Source: Sphaerodactylus townsendi (lineage: Eukaryota). Taken from it: a stretch of 64,000 nt of DNA. The position numbers and the translations under genes are program-made. Location of the stretch: NCBI RefSeq assembly GCF_021028975.2, contig NC_059426.1, positions 69,502,001-69,566,000 on the forward strand, read 5' to 3'. The stretch's first letter is position 1. Each line of letters opens with the position of its first letter. The notes beneath the pieces were generated by a model. That model saw only the letters and a list, made by a program, of their open reading frames with translations, was not told the DNA's origin and made no database searches. Positions 1,872-56,935 of the stretch are shown here, in pieces.

Positions 1872-4558
1872 TATTACAGAATGTTTATAAAGAGCTAGTA
1901 TAGGATAGTGGGTGGGGTTTTTGGCAAAGACTTCGGAGACCTGAATTCAAATCCAAAAACGGCCATTTTAATATGAATCAAATGTGCATATGCACAGAAT
2001 AAAAATAAACGTGAGCAACACAAAGGAAGTGTGGTAACTAATGGTTACTCAGGCACTTAAGTTTCCAGCGACCCCCTCCCCCATGCTTCTCATATCCAAA
2101 CATTATTCAGGACAGTGTTCTAAAAGTTTACGTTGTTGAAAAACAAACCTGTGTTAGCTTCAGTATGAAGACTTTCCTGGGAAATGGTCTAGCAGTTTCA
2201 CAGATTAGTTCAAACTTGGCGGCCCTGGCAGGATGGCATAGTGGGCTGTGATGGGCTTTTTTCCTCTGGTCTAGAGCCCATGGACATTGCAGACTTTAAT
2301 TAATTCAACATTAATTTCTGCTTCCCACAGAGCCTGTGTTGCTGGGAGGAGGGGTTCCACAAGAGATCTCACTGTAACAAGGAATTCTCAGTATTTCACC
2401 AGCATATAATTTCCAGAACACTTCAGGGAAAGCATGACAATGAAAATGGTATAAACTTTATGTAAGTTTACAGTATAGATTTGGCTGAGTATGATGCCTT
2501 GTAGCAGAAGAATCAGAAACCTTGCCACTAACCACTGTAACTTCCCTTGTTGCTATGGTGCCCAAGTTGCTAAGGAGACTGGAGAGGATGTGGTGAGTAA
2601 GATTACTAAAACAGGAAATGCAAGTTAATAGGTAGAGAAAAGCGCTTTCCTATCAGCTCTTTTTCTTCGTCTTTTACCTTGCAGGAAATCGTAGACCAAT
2701 GCTCACCACAGGCCCGATTTTATACCTCTGTTAGGAATTGGATTACAAGCCAACAGTGGAAGCAACATGGTTATAAAGAGCATAAGTAATATTGTACAGA
2801 GCTCGGAGATACAAAAACAAGGACTGTGCAGAAGTAAAGAAGTTGTGAAGTCTTTTCACTGAGATGCAAAGTTTCTTTCTGAAAGCTTTATAAAGTGATG
2901 TAGCAATGATTCGAAGAAACATTGTTGGTTCCATTATGCAAGAAACCACCAGTCAACTATTTCAATATTCCTTTCCTTTTTCTGATCCTATATACACATT
3001 GCTGATCAGTTTCAACACTGGATAGAAAAGAAATGCTCTCTTTAATCTATTTATGGAGTCCCTGCACTTGACAAAGGGAGTCTTCAAACTCATTAATCCC
3101 TTTCTCAAATTTGACCATTTCACAAAGGCCTATCTTCTACTCCCACCCAAATATTTCAGCCATTTTCTCATTGTGGAAGAACTGTGGCAAAGGAAATATG
3201 GAACTTTGCTTCAGGATAAGGGTCCTCTGGGCCTATCAAGTGTTCAGCCTGAAGGGTTAACCATTTAAGAAAGCCATGTTAGTACAAAAACAAGATGGGA
3301 ATTTATAGAAATAACTAGATTCTTGAATGTAATCTAAGTACATCTTTAATTGGTACATCTCTAGCCTGTAACAATGTATTTAGTTTCACCACGAGATAAG
3401 TAAAACATATGGTTTGAAATGATGCAGTATTGTATCACAATTAAATAAGACTATTACCAGTGTCTGTATCAGATATAGCTGTTACTGGGCATTGGATTTA
3501 GTAAGAGAAATTACCAGATAAATGATGCACAATAAAGTAAACAGACATGATTATACAGTGGCTGATCTGTTACCTATTTATATTTGACTTCAGAAAAACA
3601 TGTTGAGGTCATCAGATTTTGCATCTGAGATCACCATTGTCCAGTTGCTCCCATGAAGGCATGTTAGTCACCTTCATAGCAAGCTATGTGAAAACAGGCC
3701 TTCGTGTATATAGATTATGTGGATGAGCATCTGTTGATGCTTACTCACTCCTCTGGATATCAGTGGATCCACTGGATCCACCTTTCGCTATGAATGTGGA
3801 TGCTTATCCCCATCTACAGCCACTACATTTTGTGGGCCTCAAGGAATGAACCATGGTCTTTGTCTTTCTATGTAATAAAACTGGAACCAAGTTACATTTG
3901 CTACTGTATGTTCTAAAACAGGTGGTATACAGAGGGAAACACCCATAGGTGGAAAGACTGGGAAAGTCTGGAACTGAGCAATGGAGATCTTGCCCCCTTG
4001 ATCTCTCTTTCCAATGTTTCCACATTCTGGTCAAGTTGGGAAGCGGTTGAGGCAAGGAAAGTGTGGTGTAAATGGCTGTGTGGGCGCTTTATTGCTGCTT
4101 CTAATGCCTCTTCCTTCACAGAAGCAACAAGAGCTACACAGAGAATCTTCGTAGCCCAACATGATCTAGAGTAGATAACAGTCTGGCATTCCAGTCATGA
4201 CAGTCACAGACTGAAAGAAGAAATCACTGGCTCGGGAGTCCCGCATTACATCTGTAAAGTGACCTACATTTGTTGCAAAATTAAATCACATTTTAAAAAT
4301 ATTGTTGTAGGGACTCTGTGAATGTAACAAAGCCAGGTAAGAACAAAGATATCATTCAAAGAAACCAGTGAAATTGTCTACTTCTGAAAAGTGGATCAGC
4401 AAGAAGTAGGTATAATGATATCAAGGAAAGAATGTCAGACCGGAGTTGCAGCACAGAGACAAACAAGGGCTGTCCACTGTCACCTTCCTCTCAGCAACAT
4501 TCCTATACAAAAAGTCTCTTCAGTACTTCCAATGGTCTTTGAATCTACCCGCTCTTAC

Positions 4559-4755
4559 CTGTTGTCAAGGTCACTGCCCCCAATAAAACCATAGCGATCA
4601 ATCTTGCGATAGGGAGTCATCCCATTCAACTCAGAGTCAGAGCCCAAGGAGCTGGCATCATCCTCCCTAGGCAATGAGGAGTCAGAGGCATGTGGCAGCT
4701 CAGTTAGGTCTTGGCTTATACTGGAGAACTCAGCTGAAAGAGAAAGGTCCGACAT
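4559..4755 (-). CDS. TBC1D10C: TBC1 domain family member 10C (carabin), first coding exon; the remaining exons are not seen and probably lie left of the window
   Basis: Translates [10 protein letters not shown]...[36 protein letters not shown], matching the TBC1D10 family N-terminal motif (human TBC1D10[31 protein letters not shown]). Ends at a strong donor AG|GTAAG (intron starts 4558, phase 2). Head-to-head with PPP1CA as in human. Start codon (ATG 4755) is the first in-frame ATG after the TGA at 4825-4827. Confidence 0.85.
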
Positions 4756-5727
4756 TTCTCCCTGCAAGATGTTGGGGCAGGGGTCAGCCCCACATGTAGC
4801 CTGAGTCCAGCACCCTTGTTTGTCTCAGACAGGATTCCCGGGTTCACACGCAAGGCACTGCGCATCTATGAACGTGGCCCTTGGCAGTACTGCTCTGACT
4901 AAAGTTCCCCACAGGCTCTGCAAACTGTTTCCTCCCACAGTCATTTCCTGATACAACTGACAACACCAGGGCCCTGAAAAATGAACACAGCTAAGGTGAA
5001 CTGCGATGTGTGTGTGCATGCGTTGTGTGTGTGTAGAGGGGAATAGGGGAAACAGAGAGCAAGAACAAGTGAACAACAAATATATGGGAAGAAAACCACA
5101 GGACAGCTCCCTGTGATGCCTCTTACAGCGAACTGCAAAGTGGTTGAGACACCCCTTGATAACCTTCCTACCTTGTTCTCTGCTGCTCTGCCTTTAGACA
5201 GGAATGCAGAAGCCCGTTACCCTGCCTTTCGTGCATCCTGCAATGCTCCCTGCTGGAGGGCATGTATCAGTACCTGGCAATACAAGTCTCTAGTGGGAGG
5301 CCTTGGAGGAGTTCAATGCCCTGCATTATTTACAGGTGACTCAAATACAGTTTGTGTTGCTCCTGGCTGGAGTGTAAATGACTCAGGTCATCCAGAGTCT
5401 CTTCTAGGGAATAAATGTGACTCCTTGAGAGAGGGCTGTGTTTATGCATAGTCTTCAGTGGTCTGCATAGTGTCATGAGTTGGGCAACCTCGGTCACTGC
5501 ATGAAGAAGTCTTAGAGCACAATGGCTGGAGATGTTCAAAGTAAAAAAGCTGTGAGCTCCCTACCCAAGTCTGGTTCTCCCCAACAAATTAAGAAAAGCA
5601 GAACATTGTGTAACTCAGCAGTTCTTCCATACAGCCAGTGTGTGGAATGTATCTCCCTGAGAAGATGCAGGCAACTATTAAGAGAGTAGTGCTTTTTCTC
5701 AGGTGGTTTCAAAATGGGGGGGGGGGG

Positions 5728-6112
5728 CAGAGGTGGGATCCAGCAGGTTCTCACAGGTTCCCAAGAGTAGGTTACTAATTATTTGTGTGTGCCAAGAGGG
5801 GGTTACTAATTGGTGATTTTGCCATGTGATTTTTGCCTTAGTTACGCCCCTCCTCTCAGCAGTAGCACGCAGAACTTGAAGCAGTCTAGCAGGAGGTGCA
5901 CCGGCATGCGTGGCAGCCTGCGCGCATTCGTTTCCCGCCCAAGGACCAGCACAGCAGCTGCGTCCTTGCCACAGCCCCCCCTGGAATGCCCTGCCCCTGG
6001 AATGCCCGGCCACGCCCCCATCATGCCCCACCCAGTCCCATTGGCGCTACGCTACATTTTGAATCCCACCACCATGGGAACCTGTTACTAAAAATTTTGG
6101 ATCCCACCACTG
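5728..6112 (+). mobile_element. Non-autonomous hAT MITE, family A copy 1
   Basis: TIRs CAGAGGTGGGATCC / GGATCCCACCACTG; near-identical to 27448-27833; no TSD visible (left flank is a G13 run). Confidence 0.85.
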
Positions 6113-7314
6113 GAGTGATATTCATATTCCAAGTGGGCTAGGAAATGGTTCCAGATTGTCTTAATCAAACTAAGAAAGCTTCACAAATTTCTGTGAATGC
6201 ACAGAAAATAAAAGAAAAAGAAAAAGCATTTCTATTCAGGCATAAGCATGCATCCACATACAGATGATAATGTTCATTTTGTATAACTCGTGGCATGTTA
6301 ATTATATGGCTTCATATAAACAAACCATGGGAAAAAACTGCCCAAGTGATTGTGATTTGTGATGATCTATCTACACATAGGCTGCATATTCATTCTTCAA
6401 CAAAAATTACTTCCATATAGAAGTTTTAGTACATGTGAAACAACAACCCTGACTGCGCTCAAGCCAATCTGGGAGCAGCTATAATTGACTCAGTTCTCTC
6501 TCCTTCCCCCAGGCAGGGTGCCATATGGTTTCTGTTACTGTCTGTTCCCTAGAGTAGAGAAAATGAACATGGAAGTGGAATGGAAATGCTAGCTGCAGTG
6601 ATAACCAATATGACCCAGTGAACAGACAGCTGGGAGAGGCCAAAAACAAAGCCTGTTTTGTAGTTTGGTGGGCTTATTTCCTACTCCAATGGTGAGGACC
6701 CCAACAGTGGGAGGTTTGGGAGAAGTCATTTTTGTTCAGGCTCACTCCCCTGACCTATAAAGTGGGAACAAAAGGGACTCACTCACAGTGTTTTAGAAAC
6801 TGTTGGCAGCCGTACCAGTCCAAAGTAAAATCCAAAACAAGAACATGATGCACATAATACCTTTTATTAGGAACAACCAAAATGACATGAATGTCCAAGT
6901 GCTGGAGTTCTAGAACTCTTCACTGTTGTTACAAAAGTAGCATTTATTTATTTTATTTGTCCCACTTATACTGTGCCCTACACTGAAGTCCCAGGGCCAC
7001 TTACAGAAAGAGGTTAAAAGCCCTGTTCAAACACTGCAATCCTAAAAATATAAAAAACATCCTTTAAAACAATAAAAAAACATCCATTAAAAATCCCCAG
7101 CCCTCCCACCCCCTGACCCCCCTTCAGCTGGCATCAATGCGGGAGACCCGGGGGGGGGGGGGGCAGGTCACACACTGAAGGCATGGAAGGAAGAGGAAGG
7201 TTTTAACCAGGCGCCAAAATCCATAAAGTGTCAGCCCAAAATGTTCTCAGAAACTGTTTTGTGTCATTTCAGTTGGTCCAAATACATGGTATTACATGGT
7301 ACATGGGTTATAGC

Positions 7315-7719
7315 CAGTGGTGGGATCCAAAAATTTTAGTAACAGGTTCCCATGGTGGTGGGATTCAAACTGTGGTGTAGAGCTATTGGGGCTGGGTGGG
7401 GCACGATGGGGGCGTGGATGGGCATTCCAGGGGCGGAACATTCCTGGGCGGGGCTGTGGCAAGGACGCAGCCTTGCATGCAGTCAACAGGCCCGAGGCTT
7501 GGGCCGAATGCGCGCAGGCACAAGGAGCTACCACGCATAGCATGAGTGCACCTCCTGCTAGACTGCTTCAAGTTCTGCACGCTACTGCTGAGAGGAGGGG
7601 CGTAACTAAGGCAAAAATCAGGTGCCAAAATCACCAATTAGTAACCCACTCTCGGCACACACAAATAATTAGTAACCTACTCTTGGGAGCCTGTGAGAAT
7701 CTGCTGGATCCCACCTCTG
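7315..7719 (-). mobile_element. Non-autonomous hAT MITE, family A copy 2 (inverted)
   Basis: Same TIRs; perfect 8-bp TSD GTTATAGC at 7307-7314 and 7720-7727. Confidence 0.92.
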
Positions 7720-8220
7720 GTTATAGCTGAACATTTTACTGTATTACTGACAAACAACCTGAAATGGAATACAGGCAAGACAGAGAAGATGCTAGAAGTC
7801 AGATGCTGATGTTCGAGATTGGCATTGCTGTTACTCTGTTGCACCAAATAGAACAGGGGAATTTAGACCCAAGTTTTTTTTTCTCCTGGCAGCAGCTCCC
7901 CCTCCCCATCTGGCATCATCTTCCTATAAACATGTGGAAATCTATATCATTCTTAAAGATTTATAATGAAAAGAAAACATTTATTTCATCTGAGATTCCA
8001 CTGACAAGATTTCTTTTAGCAGCTCTGTATTTTGAAAATTATTGATTTGGTATACCTCTGTTTGTTATTGATTGTCAATTGTCTGTGGAGTACCCATATA
8101 TACTCGGAAGGCAGATGACCTTGAACGTAAGACCACTATCCCCAAATGGTATACCCAAAATAGTTTTTTATATTTGACATAACCTTAACTTGTATGCGAA
8201 TTTAAGTCAATCCTCTCTCT

Positions 8221-8416
8221 ATTGTTGAAGGCTTTCACGGCTGGAATCACTGGAGTGTTGTGGGGTTTCCGGGCTGTATGGCCATGTTCCAGTAACATTT
8301 TCTCCTGACGTTTCGCCTGCATCTGTGGCTGGCATCTTCAGAGGAAGAAGGCGAAACGTCAGGAGAAAATGCTACTGGAACACGGCCATACAGCCTGGAA
8401 ACCCCACAACACTCCA
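8221..8416. mobile_element. Penelope-like element inverted pseudo-LTR remnant
   Basis: 68-bp inverted arms 8251-8318 and 8349-8416 (3 mismatches); GACGTTTCG and GGCATCTTCAGAGG hallmarks; tail TGATTCCAGCCGTGAAAGCCTTC on the - strand. Confidence 0.8.
8303..8345 (-). ncRNA. Minimal type-I hammerhead ribozyme motif (Penelope-type)
   Basis: Minus strand reads UCCU-CUGAAGA-U-GCC(agccacagaugca)GGC-GAAAC-GUC^AGGA. All core nucleotides are present, with helix I UCCU/AGGA, helix II GCC/GGC and a palindromic loop-less helix III (ACGU). Confidence 0.75.
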
Positions 8417-8996
8417 ATGTCCCCCACCCTCTCTGATGGCATACCTGAAGTGGTGGGGGAGAAATCCTAGTCTTGCATTTGAGTAAATATAGTATTTTAA
8501 GAATTTTAGCAGTTTGAGGTGTTTTGTTCTGTTTGTTTGTAAAAGTATAGACATATTTAAATAAATGAAAATACTTTGGGAGGCTGGAAGTTTTGGTCAT
8601 TTCTGATTTGTCTGTCGGGCTATCACCGAGAACCGCCCCTCCGGGCACCTGCTCGCTCAGACGAGATCACCGGCCTCTCTCTCTCTCTCTTGCGAAAGGC
8701 CAAGGATGGCGCAACCGCAGAGCAAGATCACGCTTCTGGGCCCTTGTTGATCCCTCCAGCCTGTAGGTGGTGGTGGCGGCGCGGCGGCGGCGGCCGATGG
8801 GACCCGGGAGCGCGCGCCTTCCCTTCCTGCTTCCTCGCTCCGGCGGCGCCTCCTTGGCAAGAAGCGGGGGAGGAGAGGCGGCCCTGCCCCTGCCGCTCGT
8901 GGGCTGCCTGGTGCCACCGAAGAGCGCGAGGGGGGCCGCTGCGCCAAGCAGGAGGGACTCCGGCGGCCGAGGCTTCCTCTCCCCACCGTCGCCGCC

Positions 8997-15388
<6,392 letters not shown>

Positions 15389-25400: not shown

Positions 25401-28400
25401 TTCTCCCTATCATAACTTCATGTGCATCTACATAAGGTTTACATTATTTTGATTCAGTATTTTTAAATTAAACCAATAGTTACAGAAACAGAGGGAAGTC
25501 TATTTTCCCAGGACACCTTCTGATCCATCCATACAAAGCTCATACATTAAAATACGTCAACTGCACAACAGCCTGGCCCACTATGCAAAGAAGCCTCCGT
25601 GCATCTGGATTGTGGCAGTTGTACAACAGATGGACATCCCTCCCCCTCTTCCAAGCTACTGCAGATTACTAGACAAATGTATACACTTTAACCACAAAAT
25701 CCTTTGTATACACCAATCTCGTTTGCCCTTTATTGCAAACATAATGGTTCCAACCTGGGAGGAGCACGCAGAGTATGGGTGCACTGTTCTGTGTCAAAAA
25801 CTGCCTGCAGTGATTCACACTCCTGGAACAATAAGTCATGGGTCTTGATAACACCTGCAGAGAAAGGCTTAGTTGAAGCAGCCATAAGGAAACCTTGTCT
25901 TCCAGAGGACCCCACACCACCACAGAATTTTTCCCAAGATATATGAAGATCTTCCCACCACAGCATGTACAGACCATTTTTTTCTTAATCCCCAGTCAAA
26001 AAAATTGGGGAATCAGAGAAACTGGGAAAAAATTCTTCTGCAATTACAATTTTTCTCTTCTAATGATGATCAAAATGCTTTTAGACAGAATTTTAAAACG
26101 ATATTGTTACGGCCAATTCATGCTGCTATAAATCTTAGATCCAAAATTCAAATGTAGTAATGCTAGCATGATAGGAGGAGGAGTTGCTTTTTTTTTTAGA
26201 AAGATGCAATTTTCTGGAACTTAGTACTTCCAAATGTTGCACAAAATGGAAACTTTTCAGGGATTGGGTGCTATCCAGGAACCTGCCAAGCATACTGCCC
26301 CTGCAACATGGTAGCAAGGACTGGGCAGAGTATGGGATTATTCTTGTCTCAGGTAACAAGGAGTAATTGTGAAAAAGCTGAAAGGTTTGCTTTAATTCGT
26401 TTTCCGAAACTTGTGAATGTTCAGAATCAGAAGCCATGCCAACTGACCTATTACCTACTTGGCCTGATGACCAGTGTCATGCAGAGACAGAATAGGGAGA
26501 CCCACTGTGATTGCAGCACTGGAGTAGTCTAGATTTTGTTGATTTTTATGCCACACATCCCACCATTTCTCCAAACAGCTCCAAATGCCAAAAGTGATCA
26601 TCAGTCTTTCAGCTGATCCTCACCATTACTCTGTGAATTAAGTTAGGCTGAGTGAGAGACACCAGCCCAAAGCCATCCAAGTGAGCTTCCTGGCTTGGTG
26701 CTGCAGCTGTACTCCAGCATTCTCACCATCACATCCCCACTAGCTGAAACAGTGGCCTTATATACGTGGATTATATTGCTTAGTAATGAGAAATTTCTAA
26801 GCACAGGCAACAACTATATATCTTCACTGAACAGACTTGGAAACCCGACTAGGCCCTGTTGGTAGGAAGGAGCTTGGCAAAATGGGTGGACATGTACCAT
26901 AGCAACTCCTACCAAGAGCTTTGCCTCAGGTTTCCTGTTCTTTTCTCCTCAGAGATAAGCAAAAAAAGGAATTCTCAATTCCTGATCTTCCATGCTAAAC
27001 ATGCTGTTTTCTCCCAATACATCTGGAACCACATGGATTCCATTCTTCTAGCTCAGCACCAGTTGCTGATAAACTTGCAGAATTTCTGCTGATTGTTTCT
27101 CCATCACAGTTGTGCTCTAAGCCATGCATCCCTCCATATGTCCCACTGTATCACATTTTGTGTTTAGACAGTTCCTCCTGCCCACCACTCACCATATTTG
27201 CAGTGCAGTTGCACACGGAGCCTGCTGGCGCAGAAACGCAGTGAGATGAGACATTTCTCCACAGTCTTCTCCAGCAAGGAAAGTGAGCGGAATACAGCAA
27301 GGAAAGACTGGAAGGAACAAGAGAGACCCACAATTATATGTACATTTTCTCCCAGAATTCTTCCCCAAAGCAGGCAACAAATGCACAATGCAACACTGCA
27401 TCCAATAACACCTACTCCCCTCCCAGAAGACCAAGATGGGGTGCTTCCAGAGGTGGGATCCAGCAGGTTCTCACAGGTTCCCGAGAGTAGGTTACTAATT
27501 ATTTGTGTGTGCCAAGAGGGGGTTACTAATTGGTGATTTTGCCACGTGATTTTTGCCTTAGTTACGCCCCTCCTCTCAGCAGTAGCGCGCAGAACTTGAA
27601 GCAGTGTAGCAGGAGGTGCACTGGCGTGCGTGGCAGCCTGCGCGCATTCGTTTCCCGCCCAAGGACCGGCGCAGCAGCTACGTCCTTGCCACAGCCCCGC
27701 CCAGGAATGCCCCGCCCCTGGAATGCCCAGCCACGCCCCTGTCATGCCCCGCCCAACCCCTTTGGCGCTATGCCACAGTTTGAATCCCACCACCATGGGA
27801 ACCTGTTACTTAAATGTTTGGATCCCACTACTGGATGCTTCACTTTCATTTCAGACGGTTCTTGTTTTCAGCTGACAAAATTATTTCCACTTACAGTCAA
27901 AACTGTTCAGTTTGAAAGCCTGAATAAATAAAAGTGTATTTTTGGCAATTTGATTAATGATGGAGTGATCTTTTTGCAGAACTTGGTGTGTGCTTGCTTC
28001 CTTGTGCCTTGAAAATATTTGGTAATCAACACAGGGTGCACAGACCATGAGAATCACAATAGTTTAAAAACGATATTTCTGACAGCTCAACACCCCTGTA
28101 TCCAACTGCAGCTTCTATTAATTCATAACACTAGCCAGCCTTGCTAGATCAGACTAAACATCTGCACACTGCAGCATCTGAACAGTAGAGAACAGATCTC
28201 TCTTCAGTTTTTATTCAGTGTTTGAGGCTCTGAGATGTTGGACCCTGGAACTATTTCATTTAACTGTCATGACTAAAACCACGACAAACATTTCACATTA
28301 ACTTTGCCCATGCATTTTTATCCCCCTGCAGTGCAGTGTAGGTTAGGCCGTGAGCATGCGACTGGCTCAAGGTCACCCAATAAGATCCTGGCAGAATAGA

Positions 28401-31316: not shown

Positions 31317-32105
31317 GCTCAAGGAGAGAAGCTGCCAAGGTCATCCACATTAGGTGCAGGGAATGAAACACCTGTGAAATTGTTATTCACTATTGTTTCC
31401 TAATGTCACCTTTCCTCTGGGTTAGGAAAAATCCCCATAGGCTTCAAAGTGGACACTAGGAGATTAAAAATAAGAATAAATTCATTATTAGTACTGCTAA
31501 CATTTTTGGAGTACATATTTAAGCTAAGGATAAACACCTATTGTGTTGCAATCACTAGATACTGATTCCAAATTAGACCCACTAGGGACTCATCTAGATA
31601 AGTAAGCATAGAGGCTTAAATCATATTCCAATTTGGAAGCAGTTGAACAGCTATCTAGAATTTTACAAACTGCCCATTTACAAGTGCATACTTAATGGCT
31701 GTAGGTAGATCAAAAAGCGAATTCTTTACCCACTGTAAAAACCCAAAGTTTTGAGAAAACTCAAGTTTATAAGTTCAGAATTAGAGTAAAAATTGTTTAT
31801 ACACTTTACTTGTTCTGACCTGCAGCCCAATCTCATACTTCTTTACTCACAAGTAAGTCTCACTAAATTTAATAGTGCTGACATCCAATTAAATGGGCAC
31901 AGGACTCCATCTTCAGTATCTGCACAGCCATTTCCAATTTGGAACATGATTTAGGCCTCTGTTATTTCAATCCTATGCTTAGTTATCTAGATAAGCCCCA
32001 TTGAATAGTAGTACTTCTGAGTAGGCATGCATGGCACTTCCAGTTTTATTGCAAATTATGTGTTCACTAATTCAGCATTGTACAGGAGTTTGCTTTAGTT
32101 CCTAC

Positions 32106-32930
32106 AGGAGGAGGAGGAGTTTGGATTTATATCCCCCCTTTCTCTCCTGCAGGAGACTCAAAGGGGCTTACAATCTCCTTGCCCTTCCCCCCTCACAACA
32201 AACACTCTGGCCGTTTCCGCACGGCCTCCTGCCGCCCCCACGCCGCCAAGAGTGCGGGCGGCGTGGGGGCGGAAGCCCGTTCGCATGCAAGCATGCGAAC
32301 GGGCGAAGCGGAGGCCGGCAGACGGCAGGCGGCTCCGCACGGAGCCGCCTCTGCGCCCTCCCCCGCCCCACTCACGGTGTCCTCCTTGTCACCTGCAGGG
32401 CGTCACAGCCCCGCCCACACTGCCCTCCGACCCCTGGAGGTCGGAGGACAGTGTGGGCGGGGCTGCGACGCCCCGCAGGCGACGAGGAGGACACCGTGAG
32501 TGGGGCGGAGACGGGAGACAGCGTCTTCCCGGCGGCGCGGTTCGCACCGCGCCGCAGGGAAGACGCTCCCTCCCCAACAACAACCCTTTAAAGGGTTGTT
32601 GTTTAGGGCGGCTTGACGCCGCCCTGGGGGGAGGGAAGAAGAGTCAGGTCGCCGCTGCTGCGTTGCAGCAGCGGCGCCTGTGCGAACGGCGGCCTGGGGG
32701 TGCCTTATTTGGGGCCCCCAGGCCGTCATAAATGGGCCGTGCGGAAACGGCCTCTGTGAGGTAGGTGGGGCTGAGAGAGCTCAGAGAAGCTGTGACTAGC
32801 CCAAGGTCACCCAGCTGGCGTGTGTGGGAGTGTACAGGCTAATCTGAATTCCACAGCTCAGGCGGCGAGCTGGGAATCAAACCTGGTTCCTCCAGATTAG
32901 ATACACGAGTTCTTAACCTCTTATGCCACA
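32106..32930 (-). mobile_element. tRNA-derived squamate SINE (Squam3-like), interrupted by the Harbinger-like MITE
   Basis: Reverse complement of the SINE at 1631-1871 (TAATCTGGAG...GTGACCTTGGGCTAGTCAC...CTCAGCCCCACCTACCTCAC) with a (CTC)n tail. Confidence 0.85.
32209..32752. mobile_element. GC/CpG-rich PIF/Harbinger-like MITE nested in a SINE
   Basis: TIRs GGCCGTTTCCGCACGGCC / GGCCGTGCGGAAACGGCC; 3-bp TSD TCT; splits a SINE that rejoins as AAACAC-TCT-GTGAGGTAGG. Confidence 0.85.
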
Positions 32931-33436
32931 GGTTGTACCCCTGCATACATATCAACCGTACAAAGCCAATCCAGCTGCGACTACACTTGCCTTAAAAACA
33001 ATGAAAGTCCTTTTTATTCTGCAGGGCATTTGGAGTTCAGAAAGTGAACACCTTCTGAAAAGTTGTCAAACTTACTAACAGATATCAGTAGTTCATTTCA
33101 AAGGTGTTTCAACATTTAATGAATGTTATGCCTGTTAGGCACTTTGCCAAAGAGTGATTACTGCTGCATTTTATGGGCTTGTTTTTTAGTGATGGTTACG
33201 GCATTGCTGAGCAACACAAATAGCTCAGTTTAGTTAGACAGGGCTGGCCATGGTTAGTATTTGGATGGGAGGCAACGCAAACCACCTCCACTTGTCTCTT
33301 GCCTGGAATGCCTTCTGGATGGGTTCGCCACGAGATGGCTGTGACGCAACAGCACATAGTGGGGATTATTGCCCCAGAACCTATTAGTTTATGGGAGGAG
33401 TACAATGTCTTTAATAGAATGACAAAATAAGCCAAG

Positions 33437-43063: not shown

Positions 43064-45735
43064 CTGAAGAACTGCTTCCAGTCAAAGAAGAAGACCAGTG
43101 GTCCAACTCAGTATAAAACAGCTTCATGTAAGCTTCCGCCAAGGTACCTAAGGAACAATATATCCTAGGAGCAATTGCTCAGGCTGAAAAGAAATTGTTT
43201 AGATTTTTGAACAGAGAACATCAGGCAGACAGCTTAATTCAAGATCAGAGTACCTGTAATGTTTCCACAATAATCTAAAATCAGCTGGGGGAGAGGGATT
43301 TCTGCTGAAAAACAGGAGGAATGGGCTAATTCTTCATATAAGGTTAGTCACTTGTGTGGTAGGGAGTCTTCCATGGTAACACAGTTCTTTTAGTAATTAA
43401 ACTACATCAAATAGTTTTGCCTAAGCCCTCTGGAGCTGAATGCCCCTGCTCCAAATGGCTCTTGCAGATCTATTTTAAATGATCTATCCTCCCACTGTCC
43501 ACCTCCACTGTGTGTCTTGGTCTGAAAGTATGTTGTTCCTTAACTTGTAGGTATGATCCACCTTTTATTAGGACTAACCAAAATGACACAAAATAGGTTC
43601 AACATGGCATATTGTATTATTGTGCTTCTTTGTTGGCCAGCAGGGGGCATAAAAAACCTAGTGGTTTGAAGTTGGATGCTTTAAGCACAGCATCTTGTAG
43701 GAAAGGAGAGGAGCTCAAGCCAAGACAGATGTGGGAAATAGAATCTTTTGGGGATGTTTCACAAAGCAATTCAGTCCCGTGACAGAGGGAGAACTGGGTG
43801 CAAGTACTTTAGGCAGAAATACCAGTGTTTCTTCCCTTCCTTTGGAACACTGACTGAAAAAGCAGTAGCTGTATCAGCAGGCAGCCAATGACAAGGCCAC
43901 ACTTAGTGACTTTTCTCTGTATATTCGTTGTTGCAGATGGCCAGTGGTGGGTCAGGCAAATGCGCTGGCACAGACCCATGCCAGTTTCAGGAACTACTTT
44001 CTCTCTACCACCAACCACCCCCAGATTGGGTTGCCCATCAACTGGCAGATTGAAACTGAATTTCATTAGTCTTAAAGAACAGTTTGCACGATCAAGTCAG
44101 AAAACATGCCCCGCCCCCATTTCCCCTGTAAACTGATTTTCTTAGTGATCAGGTTAGGCTTTGTACTTTCTAATTCTTACCTGTAAGAAATCCCTGTGGA
44201 CAGGGATTTTTTTCTATAAGTCTTCATACATGAAATTTCAGAGCAAAAGATATGGGGTAGAAGATGCATGCAAGAGAAGAAAAAATGAAAATATGGGTGA
44301 TTTGGAGGTGTGGGGGATGGTTGCTTGTGATTTCACACAATGTATAGTTGACTTGGGCAACTTACTGCAGAAAGGGGTAATGACATTCACTATCTTAAAC
44401 CATCCTTAAAAGGGTCAGTGTTGTATAGTGATTAGAGTGCTAGTCTGGAACATGGACAGCTTGAGTTCAAATCCACATACCCATGAAGCTCATTGGGCCA
44501 ATCACTCTCTCAGCTTAACAGGACCTCACAAGGCTGTTGTGAGGATGCACTGAAGAACAGGAGAATCATGGGTATTGTCCTGAGCTCTTTGGGGAATGGT
44601 GAGATGTAGATATGTTGGATTAAAAGGATTACGTTTTTGATAATAGGTTTGTCAACAGCTATTAATCACGACAGGATAATGGAACCTTTATGTTCAGAGG
44701 TATCTGTAGATAGACAGAGGTATCTGTAGATACCTTCTTATTTCCCTTTTTTTAAAAACAGAAAAAAACAAAGAAAACAAAATTAAGAATATCCATAAAG
44801 CCTTGCTTGAGGGCTTCTCAGCAGCATCTATGGGGCCACTGATACAAACAGGCTGTTATACCAAATGGATCCCCTGTACTATGCAGCAACATTAGGCGTC
44901 TTTTATATGGTAACTCTGAAAACAAGAGACAATCTCCATGCTCTGTGTGTGTAGTAATTTTTTTTCTTAATTAATAAACAGGAGAGGCCATTGGGCAATA
45001 TTATGAGGCATCACCTTAATGAAAATTAAAGAAACCGTCTGAAGTTCCAGCTGGGCTTTTGTTCAAGCGAATGACGTTTATTGACGTGGCTTAACTTTCC
45101 ATTCTACCTCCTCCTTCTGCTGGCTTATATCTTTGCCCATTAGAACTGTTAGTACAAAGGCATAGCATAGCAATCACGGCGGCTTCTCTCAGTCTCTCTC
45201 TTTAATTGGTTATAATGGTAACATGTTTGGGAGAACGAAGGGCCGGGGAATGAAATTCATGTTTTGTGTTAAGGCACACAGCAACCAAAAGCCTAGCCCA
45301 GTTTTTTCCGCCGCTTTCATTGAGAAATTCCAGCACCTCCGTGCTTTGGATCAGGGACTTGAAATTTGGCAGCAGATAGGTTTCGCTTTGGTGTTAGGCG
45401 GGAGCCTTGCTTTTGTCGGCCTGGGGAAAATCTGCCCACATTTGGCCGTATTGGAAGCCTCCAAAACGTTGCAGCTTATGCATGCTTAGCAGAGACTTTC
45501 AAGAACTTGGCAGGCGAGGTTGCCAAGCTGTCTGCGCCGAGAGCGCGCCAGCAATCGGATGGGAAGTCTGGGGGGAATCCGCGGGACTGTGTTTCTCGAC
45601 CGCCAGGTGGTGGCCGAAAAGCCGAGGCATGCTGCTGTTCGTCGTGCGCCCTCTGCTGGCTGTAAAAGATAAACGCAGAATATAGTCTTGGTTGACATCA
45701 CTGACTCTCCGGAGGGAGAGTGGCACAGTCTAAAT

Positions 45736-45854
45736 CAGGGGTAGGGAACCTGCGGCTCTCCAGATGTTCAGGAACTACAATTCCCATCAGCCCCTTTCAG
45801 CATGGCCGATTGTAGTTCCTGAACATCTGGAGAGCCGCAGGTTCCCTACCCCTG
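45736..45854. mobile_element. Palindromic hAT MITE, family B
   Basis: Long TIRs CAGGGGTAGGGAACCTGCGGCTCTCCAGATGTTCAGGAACTACAAT; perfect 8-bp TSD GTCTAAAT. Confidence 0.93.
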
Positions 45855-48071
45855 GTCTAAATACTGGGATGGGTGATGGGATTCAAATAATTTAACAACC
45901 GGTTACGGTTGCGGGATACAAACCTGTATCTCTCAGAACCTAGTCTGACATTCTAACCACTACAGCACACTGGCATACTTGGTTTTACTGTGAATGGGAT
46001 TGTTGTGAGCCATCTCACAGGCCATGAAAATAATGAGACAGAAATATTTGCAGTTGTTAAATCTTGCAGCTTCAAAGGGAAAGGGGGCCTCCATGTTCAG
46101 GGGTGGTAGACATCTAACTACCAGGAAGACATCACTGGGGAAGGCCTCAGCTTTTATGCCCTATTGTTGACTGTCCAGGCCACTGTCTGGTCACTGTGTG
46201 AAACAGGATGCTGAGTCAGATGGAGCACTAGTCTGATCCAGCAGGACACTTCACATGTTCTGGTGTAAATGTCCCAAATATGGAGTCATTAGATGTCTAC
46301 AGGCATTCATTATCTGCTCCCCCCCTCCATCTGAAACATGGGGATGATGCACAGCTTACCTTTTCAGGTTCGTTGCAAGGATCATTGAGACAGAAAGCAC
46401 TTTGAACATTTGAAATGAATTATAAATACTATTATGTGGCAAGAGAACATTCTTAGTAAATGCTATCACAAATAGTGTTAGATCTCACCTGTGATTCATG
46501 TGAAAAGCACATGGACAAAAAGGCTACAAAATTATATCACAAGGCACTTTTGTCTGTTTTCCATGGCTGTGTTCCATAATTGACCATTCTAGTTGAGATA
46601 TTTGATTGCAGTGATCTACAGCTGTAACATTATACCTGTTTTGCTACTCATTCACATTACAGATCCAACTGCATCTACTCCTCAGGGTCAATGATTGTTC
46701 ACCAGGTATTTTGTGGTGATAAATGAAGATAATTGTGAATGGCCCTCAGTGATTCTAAATACTCACTAGATATCATTGAACTGTCTTCAAGAAAGGTTTC
46801 ATCACATGAATGTGATCACATCACAGATTTTATCACATCTCAAATATGGATGTGCTGATTTCATAGACGCAAAGGCAGAGGAAAGTTAGTGGTCAAGGAG
46901 TTACAGAATAAGCCAGTGGAGAACTTGAGTCCTTCAAAGCTTGCACAGAAACATTCATTTCTCAGATCCTTGTGTGAATCTTTGAGACACCCCTCCCCCA
47001 GGTGACTAGATGTGTAGGTGTTTCGGAATAATTTGCATGACTGTTTGAGCAATTGCATGAGCTGAGTAACTTCATGCAAACCCAGCCTGCTTCCACACAG
47101 TGAAAATTCACTCTGTAGTTCTCATTATGTGGTAAATGCAAATGTGGCTTAGCGATCATGAAATGGCGTCCCTTCTCAGTTTTCAAAACACTTTCTATGC
47201 CACTGCCCAATCCATTCTCAGCAGCACAACCGTGCAGGTTGAACTGCAAGTTGTATGCATTTGGAAGCAATTGCATGGTCATTCCACAACAGCCCACTTT
47301 CTCAGAATACCAGTGTTGTGTGAATTAGTGCTCACTCTGGTGTTTGCTTACACAACTTAAAATATGAAATTACTTCATATCATTGGCCATTTATGCATGT
47401 ACTACTTACCCTGCCGCTGTTTGCTTTGCAGTAAGTTTTCCTTTTGTCTTTTCTTTTTTTGTTTATCCAGGGATTTTACCCCTGTGAATTGCCCTTAGCA
47501 GAGCCAGTCACAATTATATCCTCCCATTGCTTTGTTCTTTCTGTGCAACTCAATTTAGGGAGACTGCTTGCCACTTTTTTTTTTTGGTGCTGTCTTTGGC
47601 CTAGTGTTACGTTGCTGGACCATGTACATTTTATGTCAGATTTAGAGTGCTATAGACCTTCAGCATTAATTTTTTTAAGCCCTTCTGGTAATTTTGAAAT
47701 GGTAGCCCAAAGAGTGGGAGAAACTGCTTTCGTGTGATTGGGGAAGGCGGGGGGAGAGAGAAACCCTGAAGAAAGCTTAACACACAGCGATCTCTTTCAC
47801 TTTCCTTGCAAAGGGAGAGAAAAAGTCGGACTTTAACTGGTTTTGGAAACTGTGGGGTTCTCTGATCTGAGAGCGCAGTGAGTTCCAAAGAAGGGGAAAC
47901 ATATGTATAACTGAGAACCAATCTGAAGGGAGAGTACACTTGATGCAAAGGATACTACAAGTGGGTAAATGATCATTGTTTTATCTAGCTCATCAGACCA
48001 GCAGTGCCTCTCCAAAATTCTCCTCAGGTGTGCTGCCTTAGGTTCTTTAAAATAGAGAGGCCTGGGTTAAA

Positions 48072-50590: not shown

Positions 50591-51690
50591 TAGAAAATAA
50601 GGCAAGTTCCTAAATACACAATGTTGCATAAGAATTAAAAATTAGGACATGAATATTAAGGATCCTACCCCAAATGAAACAGGTACTTTCATCCTTGAAA
50701 GGAATATGTAACCAAGAGATAAAGTTATTAGCGAGTAAAGAATCTACAAGGAGTGCTGTGGCACACCTTGGGGGGAAATGAGTAATTCTCTAGTCACTGC
50801 AGCGTTTAATGGTTGCAGTGAACAAAGCCCGAGGCTACAAAATGAATGATGAGGTTGACACGAAAGAGGGAAGTTACGCCAACTGAACTGAATGGTTTCA
50901 AATGAAATCTCTTTCTCCTCAAATAGCCTTTGGTTAAAAAAACACACACACAAATCTAAAATATAAACACTTTCCTAAATCCATTTGCTTCTGGTAAAAT
51001 AAATAAATAAATAGAGCTGGGAACTAAGGCACTTTTGTGCAATGAAATATGAGTTCAGAATGATTCACTGGCCTGTTAGCATGGTCTTCCCCACCTTCAC
51101 TAATTGCTGGCCTTTTCTGTGTTAACTTTTTAGTTTCTTTAAACAACTAAAATCTATTCTGCCTTTTTAAAAAAAAAGTTCTGTGCTCCTTCCTGGATTT
51201 TTTATAATGTTATTTTCAGGGGGGGAAATGACTCTTTTATTTTTAAAGTGTAATCTTTACCACCACCACCACCACCCCCCCCCCAGTTGTTCTATTTCCA
51301 TCAGATCAATAAGTACTGCATTAAATGGAAGTGGAGATTCTGTGTTCGTGTGTTGGGGGGGGGGGATACTGGGGTGGCTCAGTATGTGCAGTGCTGCAAA
51401 TCTAGGGCTTTTCTAAAGTTTGTAGAAAGATACATCCTGTCTGTTCAAAACTCCAATCTCTGGATTTACCGTAAGTATCCACAGATTTGGCCATGCACTT
51501 GCACTTGCTGCAGGTGTAGCTACCCACATCATCCGGCAAAAAACAAATATATAACTGCAGTTGCAGGTGACAGAAGCCACTCCCTGACCACCCATATTTA
51601 GTAGTCTTAAATAGTTCAGAAACAGATCTATGGGCCTCCCTTTCAAAAAGTCCCCTACTAAATTCCCCCACCAAAAAAATGAGTGTTAGC

Positions 51691-51892
51691 CTTGGGTGCT
51701 GTGTGGTTTCCGGGCTGTATGGCCGTGTTCTAGCAGCATTCTCTCCTGACGTTTCGCCTGCGTCTGTGGCTGGCATCTTCAGAGGATCCTGAAGGCGAAA
51801 CGTCAGGAGAGAATGCTGCTAGAACACGGTCATACAGCCCGGAAACCACACAGCACCCAAGTGATTCCGGCCGTGAAAGCCTTAGACAATAC
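51691..51892. mobile_element. Penelope-like element inverted pseudo-LTR remnant with 13-bp flanking direct repeat
   Basis: 69-bp inverted arms 51691-51759 and 51793-51861 (1 mismatch), then the tail. AGTGTTAGCCTTG occurs at both 51682-51694 and 51893-51905. Confidence 0.8.
51744..51786 (-). ncRNA. Minimal type-I hammerhead ribozyme motif (Penelope-type), second copy
   Basis: Minus strand UCCU-CUGAAGA-U-GCC(agccacagacgca)GGC-GAAAC-GUC^AGGA; identical to the 8303-8345 motif except one loop II base. Confidence 0.75.
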
Positions 51893-53891
51893 AGTGTTAG
51901 CCTTGCCTGTTTAATCAAGCCCCTGTTCTGTGAGCTCCAGGGAATGAGACCTAGTGGCTGAAGCCTCCGCCCGCAGTCAAGTCTCTTAACTCACCTTCTG
52001 CTCTTTTCCAAAAGATTGGTTCTCACTGATAAAAACTGCGTGCACCGTTTTTATCCGAAACATGTTCTATAAAAAACATGTTCTAAGAGGCGCAAAATCA
52101 GTTAGGGGTCCATTTGAAGCACACATGTCCAAACTGGTCTATTCATGCCCCTAAAATTTATAACTTTCTAAAGATGGAGGATTTGGTCAAGGAATCACCC
52201 CCCCCCCCCCCCCAAATAACGTACTCTCTCTTAATTCCTTGCGGGCCCCAAATTTATGCTACATAATTTAAATTATTCCGATAAACATTCTAGAGTTCCC
52301 TAGAAATACTGTGTCTACTTTATTTGGGAACACCAACTGTGAGTTAATTTGATCCCTGAAGGAACAGCTTGGTTGTTCCAGAGGGCAGCTTACTTTAGAA
52401 ATTGTATTTTGGCAACCTTCGTTTTCAGAAACGTAGATTATAGTTATAGAAGCATCCCTTTATGGTGTGTTTAAAAATTGTGATTGACCTGACAGCAGTA
52501 AGGAACAAGTAAAGAACAGTCTGATGGAGTTTCTATTTTATACCACCAGCTATCATGTGCTATTGCTGATCGTAGCATGATCTCTAGAGAAAGTCCCAAG
52601 CAAATTAGTACTTCCTGTTTTCTGAAACAGCATGCTGATTATTCTCTTCACAGTGCCGGGGAGCACTGATTATGCTATTAGTCATCCTGGAACTGACATA
52701 TGCCAAAGAATCTACTACAGAATTTACCTGAGAAGAAACAACAGATGCACTTGAGTGAAAAAGCATATGTGAATGAATTCTATGGTTTCTTTTTAGCATT
52801 CAGACAGTGACTTGAAGTATGATTTTTACCTAGTGTGGCTGCACAATGATGTTTCTAGCACACTTCTCATGGGTGACCTGTATTATCTGCCCTGGATCTG
52901 CACAAAACTTGAAATGACATGATTACATGAAGTGCCCAGCCCCGTTAATCATATTGGAATGTCCAGTGATGTCATTCTCCTGTCATAGTTTGCCAATCCC
53001 TTTAATGGATGAATGGGAAGTTGGTGAAAAGGAAACCCATGGCAAGAACTTGAGAGAGCACATGGGGAACAGCAGCAGAAAGCAGCACAGACATATGATA
53101 ACAAGGGGCAAGATCCAAAGGGGCAGAAAGCACTGTCTTTCCATGAAAGTTGTACAAAATTACACCACCAAGAACAGTCATCATCTGTGTATTTGTATGA
53201 GAGGAAGCAGCTAATGGCTATATTTCAGCTTGATTTTTGTGATCTTACCAGTGATGTCTCTACAGGAAAAACCAGAAATATGTTTTATTCCTATCCCAAC
53301 GCCCTTTTAAGCATGTCCCCAAGCCATTCCCCTCCAAACACTACAGGCTAGCAGGGGAGGGGAGAAGAGGTCAAGACAGCTCAAGCAAAGGTTGGCAAGT
53401 GATAAGCTTGACTAGAACTGGGGCCACTGGAGGGTGCGGGAGCATCTCTGGTGAGCTCAGCCACCCACAGTGCTTCCTGTGATGGGGCGCCTGGAGAGGG
53501 GGAGAGAGAGAGGCAGCAGGGGCTGGGGACAGCAGACCTAGACAGCCTGCCAAAACTATGCATGCCAGGTGGTGCCCTGTGCAGCTATGTATGGAATGGC
53601 TTAGCCTTGTGTCAGGGATGCTGCTGGGATGAGAGTCAAACATGGAAGCTACTCACAAAGGCCTCTCTTCCCATGAGAAGGCTAGATAATTAGTTGATTT
53701 AGTCACTCTTTTAGCCTCCCTGAAACCCACAGGATTCCATACAAGAACTCTACTAACTGCCTAGCGGGAGCTCTCAGAGGCAGAGGAACTTGCAACCATT
53801 CTGCTTCTGAAGAATGGCACTAAGGCTGGTGCACCTTCCTGACATTTGGAAGCTATCATTCTGTTCTACTCCTATAATTCTAGGTCTACCC

Positions 53892-56832: not shown

Positions 56833-56935
56833 AATGCTACTAGAACACGGCCATACAGCCCAGAAACCACACAACCCCCCAGTGATTCCAGCCATGAAAG
56901 CATTATGCATTTTATGAACACTTCGACAATACATT
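56833..56935 (+). mobile_element. Truncated Penelope pLTR fragment (no ribozyme core)
   Basis: Same arm and tail sequence as the other two copies (ATGCTACTAGAACACGGCCATACAGCCC...TGATTCCAGCCATGAAAGC...TTCGACAATAC). Confidence 0.75.

What the first reader, a model, noticed from the sequence alone, without database searches (positions are those of the whole stretch)
8303..8345. Intact hammerhead ribozyme beside the PPP1CA CpG island, facing TBC1D10C, with a built-in antisense lock
Seen: the - strand reads UCCU CUGAAGA U GCC-loop-GGC GAAAC GUC^AGGA, i.e. the complete hammerhead core with predicted cleavage between 8307 and 8306, about 280 bp from the CpG island edge. Helix III is a loop-less palindrome (ACGU). 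The 68-nt arm 8416-8349, transcribed first on that strand, is complementary to the ribozyme's 3' half. Known: Penelope-like elements carry minimal type-I hammerheads of this form that cleave as dimers. Inference: divergent RNA from the PPP1CA promoter (or a TBC1D10C pre-mRNA starting there) would contain a self-cleaving motif controlled by competition between hairpin and dimer. It could act as a conditional terminator or decay switch between the two genes.
Basis: partly seen in the sequence, partly recalled or inferred. Interest (0 to 1): 0.8.

Follow-up and report, generated by a model that had tools for sequence, protein, structure and literature searches.

The report
Penelope retrotransposon stub carrying hammerhead motif
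The hammerhead ribozyme motif is real, but it is the standard motif at the start of a Poseidon-type Penelope-like retrotransposon, here in one of roughly 100,000 short head-to-head stubs in this genome, and nothing shows that it regulates PPP1CA or TBC1D10C.

Summary
Observation confirmed. The - strand 8345..8303 carries a complete minimal type-I hammerhead (HHR) core, with predicted cleavage between 8307 and 8306. A 76-nt inverted repeat covers its 3' half. A descriptor scan finds two such motifs in 64 kb, against none in 300 shuffles, and both lie in copies of one repeat.

The repeat is the start of a Poseidon-type Penelope-like element (PLE). Bases 8335..8222 (-) align without gaps, about 82% identical, to bases 1-114 of the published Anolis Poseidon_Ac consensus. 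The HHR wraps the element's start codon. The cut site is 26 nt after that codon, and the copy ends 114 nt into the ORF. Both distances match what was measured for Poseidon_Ac.

The "antisense lock" is the inverted, 5'-truncated, tail-less partner copy, a documented PLE insertion layout.

The regulatory reading has no support:
- The hairpin beats the HHR fold by 33 kcal/mol.
- There is no nearby partner for a dimer.
- The Anolis HHR cleaves only with PLE protein, and its authors found no RNA-seq read ends at its cut site.
- No RNA run exists for this locus.

This scan already holds 143 notes on the same family elsewhere in this genome. Verdict: ordinary transposon relic, low interest.

The parts
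8303..8345 (-). Minimal type-I hammerhead motif. Helix I 5' strand, CUGAAGA, bulged U, helix II, GAAA, ACGU, C17, helix I 3' strand. Predicted cleavage between 8307 and 8306.
   Evidence: All core positions are present. The features match the PLE min-HHR description in PMC4209133.
8222..8349 (-). Sense, tail-bearing copy of a Poseidon-type PLE: about the last 10 nt of the unit (pLTR end), a few junction letters, and ORF bases 1-114.
   Evidence: Ungapped hand alignment with the Poseidon_Ac consensus: 94 of 114 bases identical. Over the 38 codons, 23 of 38 residues are identical.
8333..8335 (-). Start codon of the PLE ORF, formed by A9, the bulged U and G10.1 of the hammerhead.
   Evidence: [quoted passage not shown] The spacing here is the same.
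8222..8248 (-). The 'tail' of about 27 nt, present only on the sense copy. The element ends about 114 nt into the ORF.
   Evidence: Alignment A1. The RT initiation site at 111-118 nt and the tail between two RT start sites are described in PMC11167929. A tail at only one end is described in PMC8557442.
8350..8419 (+). Inverted, 5'-truncated, tail-less second copy (ORF bases about 17-89).
8428..8434 (-). Possible target-site duplication AGAGAGG (left copy). 8420-8427 are letters of unknown origin between it and the inverted arm.
   Evidence: Read. It is short and microsatellite-like, so uncertain.
8212..8218 (-). Possible target-site duplication AGAGAGG (right copy).
   Evidence: Read. Uncertain.
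51695..51892 (+). Second stub of the same family, flanked by a perfect 13-bp target-site duplication (51682-51694 and 51893-51905). Here the complete hammerhead (51786-51744, - strand) lies in the tail-less inverted copy, and the tail-bearing copy starts only near the GAAAC box.
56833..56935 (+). Third copy, 5'-truncated. It has only the distal part and the tail, with a 16-nt insertion, and no hammerhead.

Best explanation
The locus is a dead-on-arrival, head-to-head stub of a Poseidon-type Penelope-like retrotransposon, inserted about 190-270 bp upstream of the PPP1CA CpG island. Shown: the tail-bearing copy (- strand 8349..8222) holds the end of the PLE unit and the first 114 nt of its ORF. 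It therefore holds the element's own minimal hammerhead, which wraps the start codon. A second, tail-less copy lies inverted against it (8350-8419). Inferred mechanism: the PLE enzyme nicks both DNA strands and primes reverse transcription on both, starting at two internal RNA sites about 27 nt apart. Both cDNAs stopped early and were joined, which gave a palindrome with a copy-specific junction. In the element's life cycle the hammerhead belongs to tandem PLE transcripts, where it acts as a dimer or with help from the PLE protein. In this solitary stub it is most likely inert. If the - strand is transcribed, the 5' arm zips onto the 3' half of the motif as it emerges, and there is no second hammerhead in cis to build helix III. 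Its position next to PPP1CA and TBC1D10C is incidental.
For: 1. Homology to Poseidon_Ac: 94 of 114 bases and 23 of 38 residues are identical, counted by hand. 2. Three landmarks match that element: the start codon sits inside the HHR, the cut site is 26 nt after the start codon, and the copy ends 114 nt into the ORF, within the measured RT start window of 111-118 nt. 3. [quoted passage not shown] 4. The layout is documented for PLEs: an inverted 5'-truncated copy and a tail on one side only. PAc cleaves and extends both DNA strands. 5. The window holds a second stub with a perfect 13-bp target duplication, in which the HHR lies in the opposite arm, and a third 5'-truncated copy. 6. Summed contig depth over the element is 6-16 million, against about 56-130 on the unique flanks. 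Depth falls about 500-fold at the junction 8346-8348, so the family is huge and each copy has its own junction. 7. The full element folds at -153.1 kcal/mol, but only at -120.0 with HHR helices I and II forced. The helix I pair probability is 0. 8. S. mansoni min-HHRs cleave weakly and only as dimers. The PAc HHR does not cleave without PAc protein, and the authors found no RNA-seq read ends at its cut site.
Against: 1. This copy keeps every core nucleotide and all four CpGs of the two GAAACG boxes, although 17-25% of family members have lost each of them. That could mean constraint. It could equally mean youth, or low methylation beside a CpG island. 2. The junction letters happen to lengthen helix I to 5 pairs. 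3. The - strand has no AATAAA or ATTAAA hexamer between 8900 and 7985, so a divergent transcript from the island could run through the whole element. 4. Transcription and cleavage were not tested, because no RNA data exist for this locus. 5. The two-sided priming model is inferred from in vitro work on the Anolis element, not shown for this genome.
Confidence: 0.88

Rival explanations
1. Exapted self-cleaving switch. Divergent transcripts from the PPP1CA CpG island, or TBC1D10C pre-mRNAs that start there, are cut at 8307/8306 when the hairpin is opened or when a partner RNA or PLE protein is present. This terminates or destabilises them.
For: The core is intact. The element lies in the path of - strand transcription from the island, and the first poly(A) hexamer lies only at 7985. 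The PAc HHR does cleave when PAc protein is added. With about 1e5 family copies, partner RNAs and PLE protein could exist in some cells.
Against: There is a 33 kcal/mol penalty against the HHR fold, and the blocking arm is transcribed first. There is no cis partner within 43 kb. Helix III in trans would be only 4 bp. The layout is generic for the family and not special to this locus. The Anolis study found no RNA-seq read ends at the HHR cut site. No RNA data support transcription here.
Confidence: 0.04
2. Hairpin small-RNA source. If transcribed, the near-perfect 76-bp stem is processed by Drosha/Dicer-type enzymes or edited by ADAR. It would then act as a TE-derived miRNA/siRNA locus, or as a dsRNA-dependent end point for upstream antisense RNA, independent of the hammerhead.
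For: The hairpin is very stable: -147.8 kcal/mol, z = -19.4. It gives sub-threshold hits to TE-like miRNA precursor models: MIR7504 at 66.4 bits and mir-2041 at 60 bits.
Against: All Rfam scores are below the gathering thresholds (83 and 70 bits), and the hits occur on both strands. That pattern reflects any long palindrome. There are no small-RNA or RNA data. With about 1e5 similar hairpins genome-wide, this locus has no specific role.
Confidence: 0.05
3. A non-autonomous palindromic mini-element (a SINE-like or MITE-like family) that spreads as a hairpin unit, rather than an independently truncated PLE insertion.
For: The two stubs in the window are of similar size, about 200 bp, and have similar arm ends. 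An earlier scan note (s1-745877) calls them a family of mini-elements.
Against: The junction between the arms differs between the two copies, and the complete HHR lies in opposite arms. Depth collapses about 500-fold at the junction, and hundreds of different joints are seen. The tail sits on one side only and a 5'-truncated copy exists, which indicates target-primed reverse transcription and not a DNA transposon. The arm ends coincide with RT start sites, which explains the uniform size.
Confidence: 0.03

Closest known systems
Hammerhead of Poseidon_Ac (PAc), the Penelope-like element of Anolis carolinensis (Frangieh et al. 2024, PMC11167929; Repbase consensus by Arkhipova 2006)
   Same: Same position in the element: the unit end ...CCUCUGARG joins AUGCC..., the start codon is A9-U-G10.1, the cut lies 26 nt after the start codon, and GGCGAAACGUCAGGAG is identical. 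About 82% DNA identity over ORF bases 1-114. The copy ends at the RT start site, 111-118 nt into the ORF.
   Different: N7 is A here and G in PAc. There are a few changes in the helix II loop. Helix I is 5 pairs here because of junction letters, and about 3 in the PAc consensus. The window copy has no RT or endonuclease coding part. It comes from another squamate genome; the species is coded and was not identified here.
Minimal hammerheads of metazoan PLEs (Cervera and de la Pena 2014, PMC4209133)
   Same: The catalytic boxes, the unpaired nucleotide between 9 and 10.1, the G10.1-C11.1 pair, palindromic 15.2-16.2 with no loop 3, a short helix I and a longer helix II. Most occur as single motifs in truncated PLEs, and some as pairs on opposite strands 100-700 bp apart.
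   Different: None in kind. Helix II here has an A.A mismatch (3+2 pairs) instead of a continuous 6-8 bp.
Complex tandem/inverted PLE insertions with a one-sided tail (Evgen'ev and Arkhipova 2005; Craig et al. 2021, PMC8557442)
   Same: A 5'-truncated copy with an inverted 5'-truncated copy directly against it, and a tail of about 30 nt at one end only.
   Different: Both copies are extremely short (about 128 and 70 nt), so the result looks like a miniature palindrome.
Rfam Hammerhead_1 (RF00163) and other Rfam hammerhead families
   Same: The same catalytic core and type-I topology.
   Different: No Rfam hammerhead model reports this motif at E<=10. Those models expect a helix III stem-loop.

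Membership tests
PLE minimal type-I hammerhead (Cervera and de la Pena 2014) | Catalytic boxes CUGANGA, GAAA and UH in type-I order | tested here: met
   CUGAAGA at 8341-8335, GAAA at 8314-8311, U16.1 at 8308, C17 at 8307.
PLE minimal type-I hammerhead (Cervera and de la Pena 2014) | [quoted passage not shown] | tested here: met
   U8334. The feature is listed in PMC4209133.
PLE minimal type-I hammerhead (Cervera and de la Pena 2014) | G10.1-C11.1 pair closing helix II | tested here: met
   G8333 pairs with C8315.
PLE minimal type-I hammerhead (Cervera and de la Pena 2014) | Palindromic 15.2-16.2 with no or minimal loop 3, allowing a dimer | tested here: met
   A-C-G-U at 8311-8308. The descriptor with the palindrome rule matched.
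PLE minimal type-I hammerhead (Cervera and de la Pena 2014) | Lies in the pLTR or start of a Penelope-like element | tested here: met
   Homology to the Poseidon_Ac unit end and ORF start.
PLE minimal type-I hammerhead (Cervera and de la Pena 2014) | Self-cleavage at C17, as a dimer or with protein | not testable with these tools
   No wet assay is possible and no RNA run holds the locus. Folding predicts that the HHR fold is excluded in the native context.
Poseidon-type Penelope-like element insertion | ORF with RT and GIY-YIG endonuclease | tested here: not met
   Only the first 38 codons are present, followed by a stop in the flank. This is a stub derived from such an element, not an autonomous member.
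Poseidon-type Penelope-like element insertion | 5' truncation with an adjacent inverted 5'-truncated copy | tested here: met
   Described in PMC8557442.
Poseidon-type Penelope-like element insertion | 3' end at the internal RT start site, with a tail of about 30 nt at one end only | tested here: met
   The end lies 114 nt into the ORF. The tail-less arms stop about 27 nt earlier in both stubs. Compare PMC11167929.
Poseidon-type Penelope-like element insertion | Target-site duplication | tested here: inconclusive
   Copy 2 has a perfect 13-bp duplication. The copy under study has only a 7-nt AGAGAGG match in a GA-rich flank.
Rfam hammerhead families (RF00163, RF00008, RF02275-7) | Covariance-model score at or near the gathering threshold | tested here: not met
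   No hit at E<=10 on 3 kb or on 91 bases.
miRNA precursor families MIR7504 / mir-2041 | Score above the Rfam gathering threshold | tested here: not met
   66.4 bits against 83, and 60 against 70, with hits on both strands.

The most novel reading that the evidence does not exclude
This particular stub has been co-opted. Its long hairpin, or its intact hammerhead helped by PLE protein or a trans partner, ends or destabilises upstream-antisense or TBC1D10C-directed transcripts from the bidirectional PPP1CA CpG-island promoter. The retention of all core bases and CpGs would then reflect constraint.
Probability: 0.04. Interest if true: 0.55.

Novelty: already known. Interest (0 to 1): 0.1.

Why it matters
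As found, it matters little: it is one more copy of a known ribozyme-bearing transposon. It has practical value for the scan. In this genome, palindromes of about 200 bp with a CUGANGA...GAAACGUC motif are Poseidon-type PLE stubs. Their 'antisense arm', one-sided tail and variable junction all follow from the element's insertion mechanism, so such hits can be filed without further work. The stubs do give natural evidence that fits the two RT start sites and two-strand priming measured in vitro for the Anolis element. If the regulatory reading were true, it would be a rare case of a vertebrate promoter-proximal transposon ribozyme taken over by the host.

Tried and rejected
1. Rfam search for hammerhead families on 3 kb and on 91 bases at E<=10 gave no hammerhead hit. 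I do not count this against the motif, because the models require a helix III loop.
2. miRNA reading: the Rfam hits to MIR7504, mir-2041 and others fall below threshold, occur on both strands, and are explained by the palindrome.
3. 'Flip/flop' loop inversion of a symmetric master element. I considered this because the loop has opposite orientation relative to the tail in the two stubs. I rejected it because alignment A1 shows that the complete copy is simply the tail-bearing one in stub 1 and the tail-less one in stub 2.
4. DNA transposon (MITE): rejected because of the one-sided tail, the 5'-truncated third copy and the homology to a PLE ORF.
5. RNA evidence: the look-up of sequencing runs returned four holders, none on record as RNA, so strand-specific transcription and cleavage ends could not be examined.
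6. Presence or absence in relatives: only one close relative was available (organism B, 0.73 of sampled words). It has the insertion, which says little about its age.
7. Pfam scan of ten ORFs for a PLE reverse transcriptase or endonuclease in the window found none. It found only a Rad9 exon.
8. I did not run a machine alignment against Poseidon_Ac, because that would have meant typing a long sequence. The identities were counted by hand.
9. The TBC1D10C name rests on the DRYGFIGG-containing exon and on the gene order TBC1D10C-PPP1CA-RAD9A known from human, which is my own knowledge. No TBC domain was found within the window.

Full report
**Observation**

The - strand from 8345 to 8303 reads helix I 5' strand UCCU, CUGAAGA, one extra U, helix II (GCC ... 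GGC, with an inner GC/GC pair and a 7-nt loop), GAAA, then C-G-U-C and AGGA. Every invariant hammerhead position is present. The loop-less ACGU stands in for helix III.

The inverted repeat is also real. Its arms are 8248-8323 and 8344-8419, 76 nt long and 92% complementary. As RNA the region folds into one hairpin of -147.8 kcal/mol, z = -19.4.

I wrote a descriptor modelled on the published min-HHR one. It requires CUGANGA, an optional bulge, a helix II of at least 3 pairs, GAAA, a palindromic 15.2/16.2, UH, and a helix I of at least 4 pairs. It finds exactly two hits in the 64-kb window: this one and 51786-51744 on the - strand. In 300 dinucleotide-preserving shuffles the mean was 0, or 0.003 with the palindrome rule dropped. 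The motif is therefore not chance.

Rfam's hammerhead models do not report it, even at E<=10 on a 91-base query. Those models expect a helix III stem-loop. The only Rfam hits are sub-threshold matches, on both strands, to TE-like miRNA hairpin families.

**Context**

- PPP1CA is on the + strand. Exon 1 (LNLDSII) is at 9015-9035, with further exons from 12437 to 14187. The alpha-type C-terminus ...[16 protein letters not shown] is at 15350-15385.
- The CpG island begins near 8616 and runs to about 10100, about 270 bp from the motif.
- A TBC1D10-like N-terminal exon (DRYGFIGG) lies on the - strand at 4555-4767.
- A Rad9 exon lies at 27164-27796 on the - strand.
- This matches the gene order TBC1D10C-PPP1CA-RAD9A known from human, which I give from my own knowledge.

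RNA running leftwards from the island would read the 5' arm first and then the hammerhead. The first AATAAA on that strand is at 7985.

**What it is**

BLAST of the region against the window finds a second complete copy at 51695-51892 and a 5'-truncated one at 56833-56935. The second copy is flanked by a perfect 13-bp target-site duplication (51682-51694 and 51893-51905).

All three copies end in the same tail (...GTGATTCC.GCC.TGAAAGC...ACAATA), and the tail is on one side only (alignment A1).

The published consensus of Poseidon_Ac, the Penelope-like element (PLE) of Anolis carolinensis, is File S1 of PMC11167929. It begins with ATGCC...GGCGAAACGTCAGGAGAGAATG and ends with ...CCTCTGAGG. In tandem copies, the unit end and the unit start together make the same hammerhead.

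By hand, window bases 8335..8222 (-) align without gaps to Poseidon_Ac bases 1-114, with 94 of 114 identical. The 38 codons give 23 of 38 identical residues (MPA.D.GETSGEN..GTWP.SP...).

Three landmarks measured for the Anolis element recur here:
- The ORF starts at the beginning of stem II. Here that is A9, the bulged U and G10.1 at 8335-8333.
- The cut site is 26 nt after the start codon.
- Reverse transcription starts 111-118 nt into the ORF. This copy ends at base 114.

The motif also shows each feature that Cervera and de la Pena list as typical of PLE min-HHRs:
- The G10.1-C11.1 pair.
- Palindromic 15.2-16.2.
- A short helix I.

**The 'antisense lock'**

PLE insertions are typically strongly 5'-truncated. 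They often carry an inverted 5'-truncated copy directly against the 5' end, and a tail of about 30-40 bp at one end only (PMC8557442). The Anolis enzyme nicks and extends both DNA strands. It starts reverse transcription at two internal sites, and the tail is the stretch between them.

Alignment A1 fits this exactly. In both stubs the inverted arm stops about 27 nt before the tail end.
- In stub 1 the tail-bearing copy is the longer one and contains the complete hammerhead.
- In stub 2 the tail-less inverted copy is the longer one and contains it.

I had first considered a flip/flop inversion of the loop, and this observation removes the need for it.

Laying public contigs on 6400-8990 gave these results:
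- Summed depth is 6-16 million over 8227-8400, against about 56-130 on the unique flanks. This points to a family of the order of 1e5 copies. The figure is rough, because the tool warns that summed depth is not a copy number. Three copies in 64 kb point the same way.
- Depth falls about 500-fold at the junction 8346-8348, and hundreds of alternative joints appear. Each insertion therefore has its own junction.
- Family variants at 8307, 8309, 8314, 8315, 8352, 8353 and 8358 are all C>T or G>A, at 17-25%. Most are at CpG sites. This copy keeps them all.
- Contigs from both sampled organisms run from the unique flanks into the element on both sides, so the insertion is shared by them. They are close relatives (0.73 of sampled words).

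**How it most likely works**

The hammerhead belongs to the PLE life cycle, in tandem unit-length transcripts.
- In vitro, min-HHRs of this kind cleave weakly and only as dimers.
- The Anolis one does not cleave without the PLE protein.
- Its cleavage is not needed for insertion in vitro.
- The authors found no RNA-seq reads beginning or ending at its cut site.

In this stub, the full element folds at -153.1 kcal/mol. Forcing helices I and II of the hammerhead gives -120.0, a penalty of 33 kcal/mol, and the helix I pair probability is 0. Even the isolated 54-nt motif prefers another fold (-12.0 against -9.2). The blocking arm is transcribed first. The nearest second hammerhead is 43 kb away, and helix III in trans would be only 4 bp.

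The best-supported reading is therefore an inert transposon relic whose place near the PPP1CA promoter is incidental (confidence 0.88). The two-strand priming origin is inferred from the in vitro work and the layout of the copies, not shown directly.

**Rivals**

- A hairpin-derived small-RNA or dsRNA effect (0.05).
- A self-propagating palindromic mini-element (0.03).

None could be tested with RNA data. The look-up of sequencing runs returned four holders from one study, none on record as RNA.

**Comparison and novelty**

The motif is a member of the PLE min-HHR kind, and the locus is a stub of a Poseidon-type PLE. Both are described in the literature for reptiles: turtle and snakes in PMC4209133, and Anolis in PMC11167929.

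The scan's own index already holds 143 notes with 'hammerhead' and 'Penelope' in this genome. These include follow-ups that reached the same reading on other DNA. I treated them as leads and tested the claim independently here against the published consensus.

Noticed in passing
window 5700-6140 (-) and 7290-7790 (+): Two copies of another very abundant repeat lie in inverted orientation about 1.2 kb apart, between the TBC1D10-like exon and the Penelope stub. Their ORF translations share ...[26 protein letters not shown]. Summed contig depth over 7270-7790 is 1-16 million, as high as for the Penelope stub. Pfam gives no hit for 7317-7730. The family was not identified.
   Followed up: partly
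window 51695-51892: The second Penelope stub has a perfect 13-bp target-site duplication (AGTGTTAGCCTTG). Its complete hammerhead (51786-51744, - strand) lies in the tail-less inverted arm. The junction is a GGATCC palindrome, and the tail-bearing arm lacks helix II.
   Followed up: yes
window 56833-56935: The third copy is 5'-truncated and tail-bearing, and has a 16-nt insertion inside the tail region. A lone match to the tail motif on the - strand at 56691 may be chance.
   Followed up: partly
window 8352-8358 and 8309-8315: This stub keeps all four CpGs of its two GAAACG boxes, while 17-25% of family contigs show C>T or G>A at each. This could reflect youth, or low methylation next to the CpG island. 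It was not resolved.
   Followed up: no
window 27164-27796 (-): An ORF with a Rad9 domain match (E = 4.6e-05, 23.4 bits, just under Pfam's cut-off of 25) lies downstream of PPP1CA on the opposite strand. This fits conserved TBC1D10C-PPP1CA-RAD9A gene order. Further CpG-rich stretches lie at 32001-33000 and 45501-46000.
   Followed up: partly
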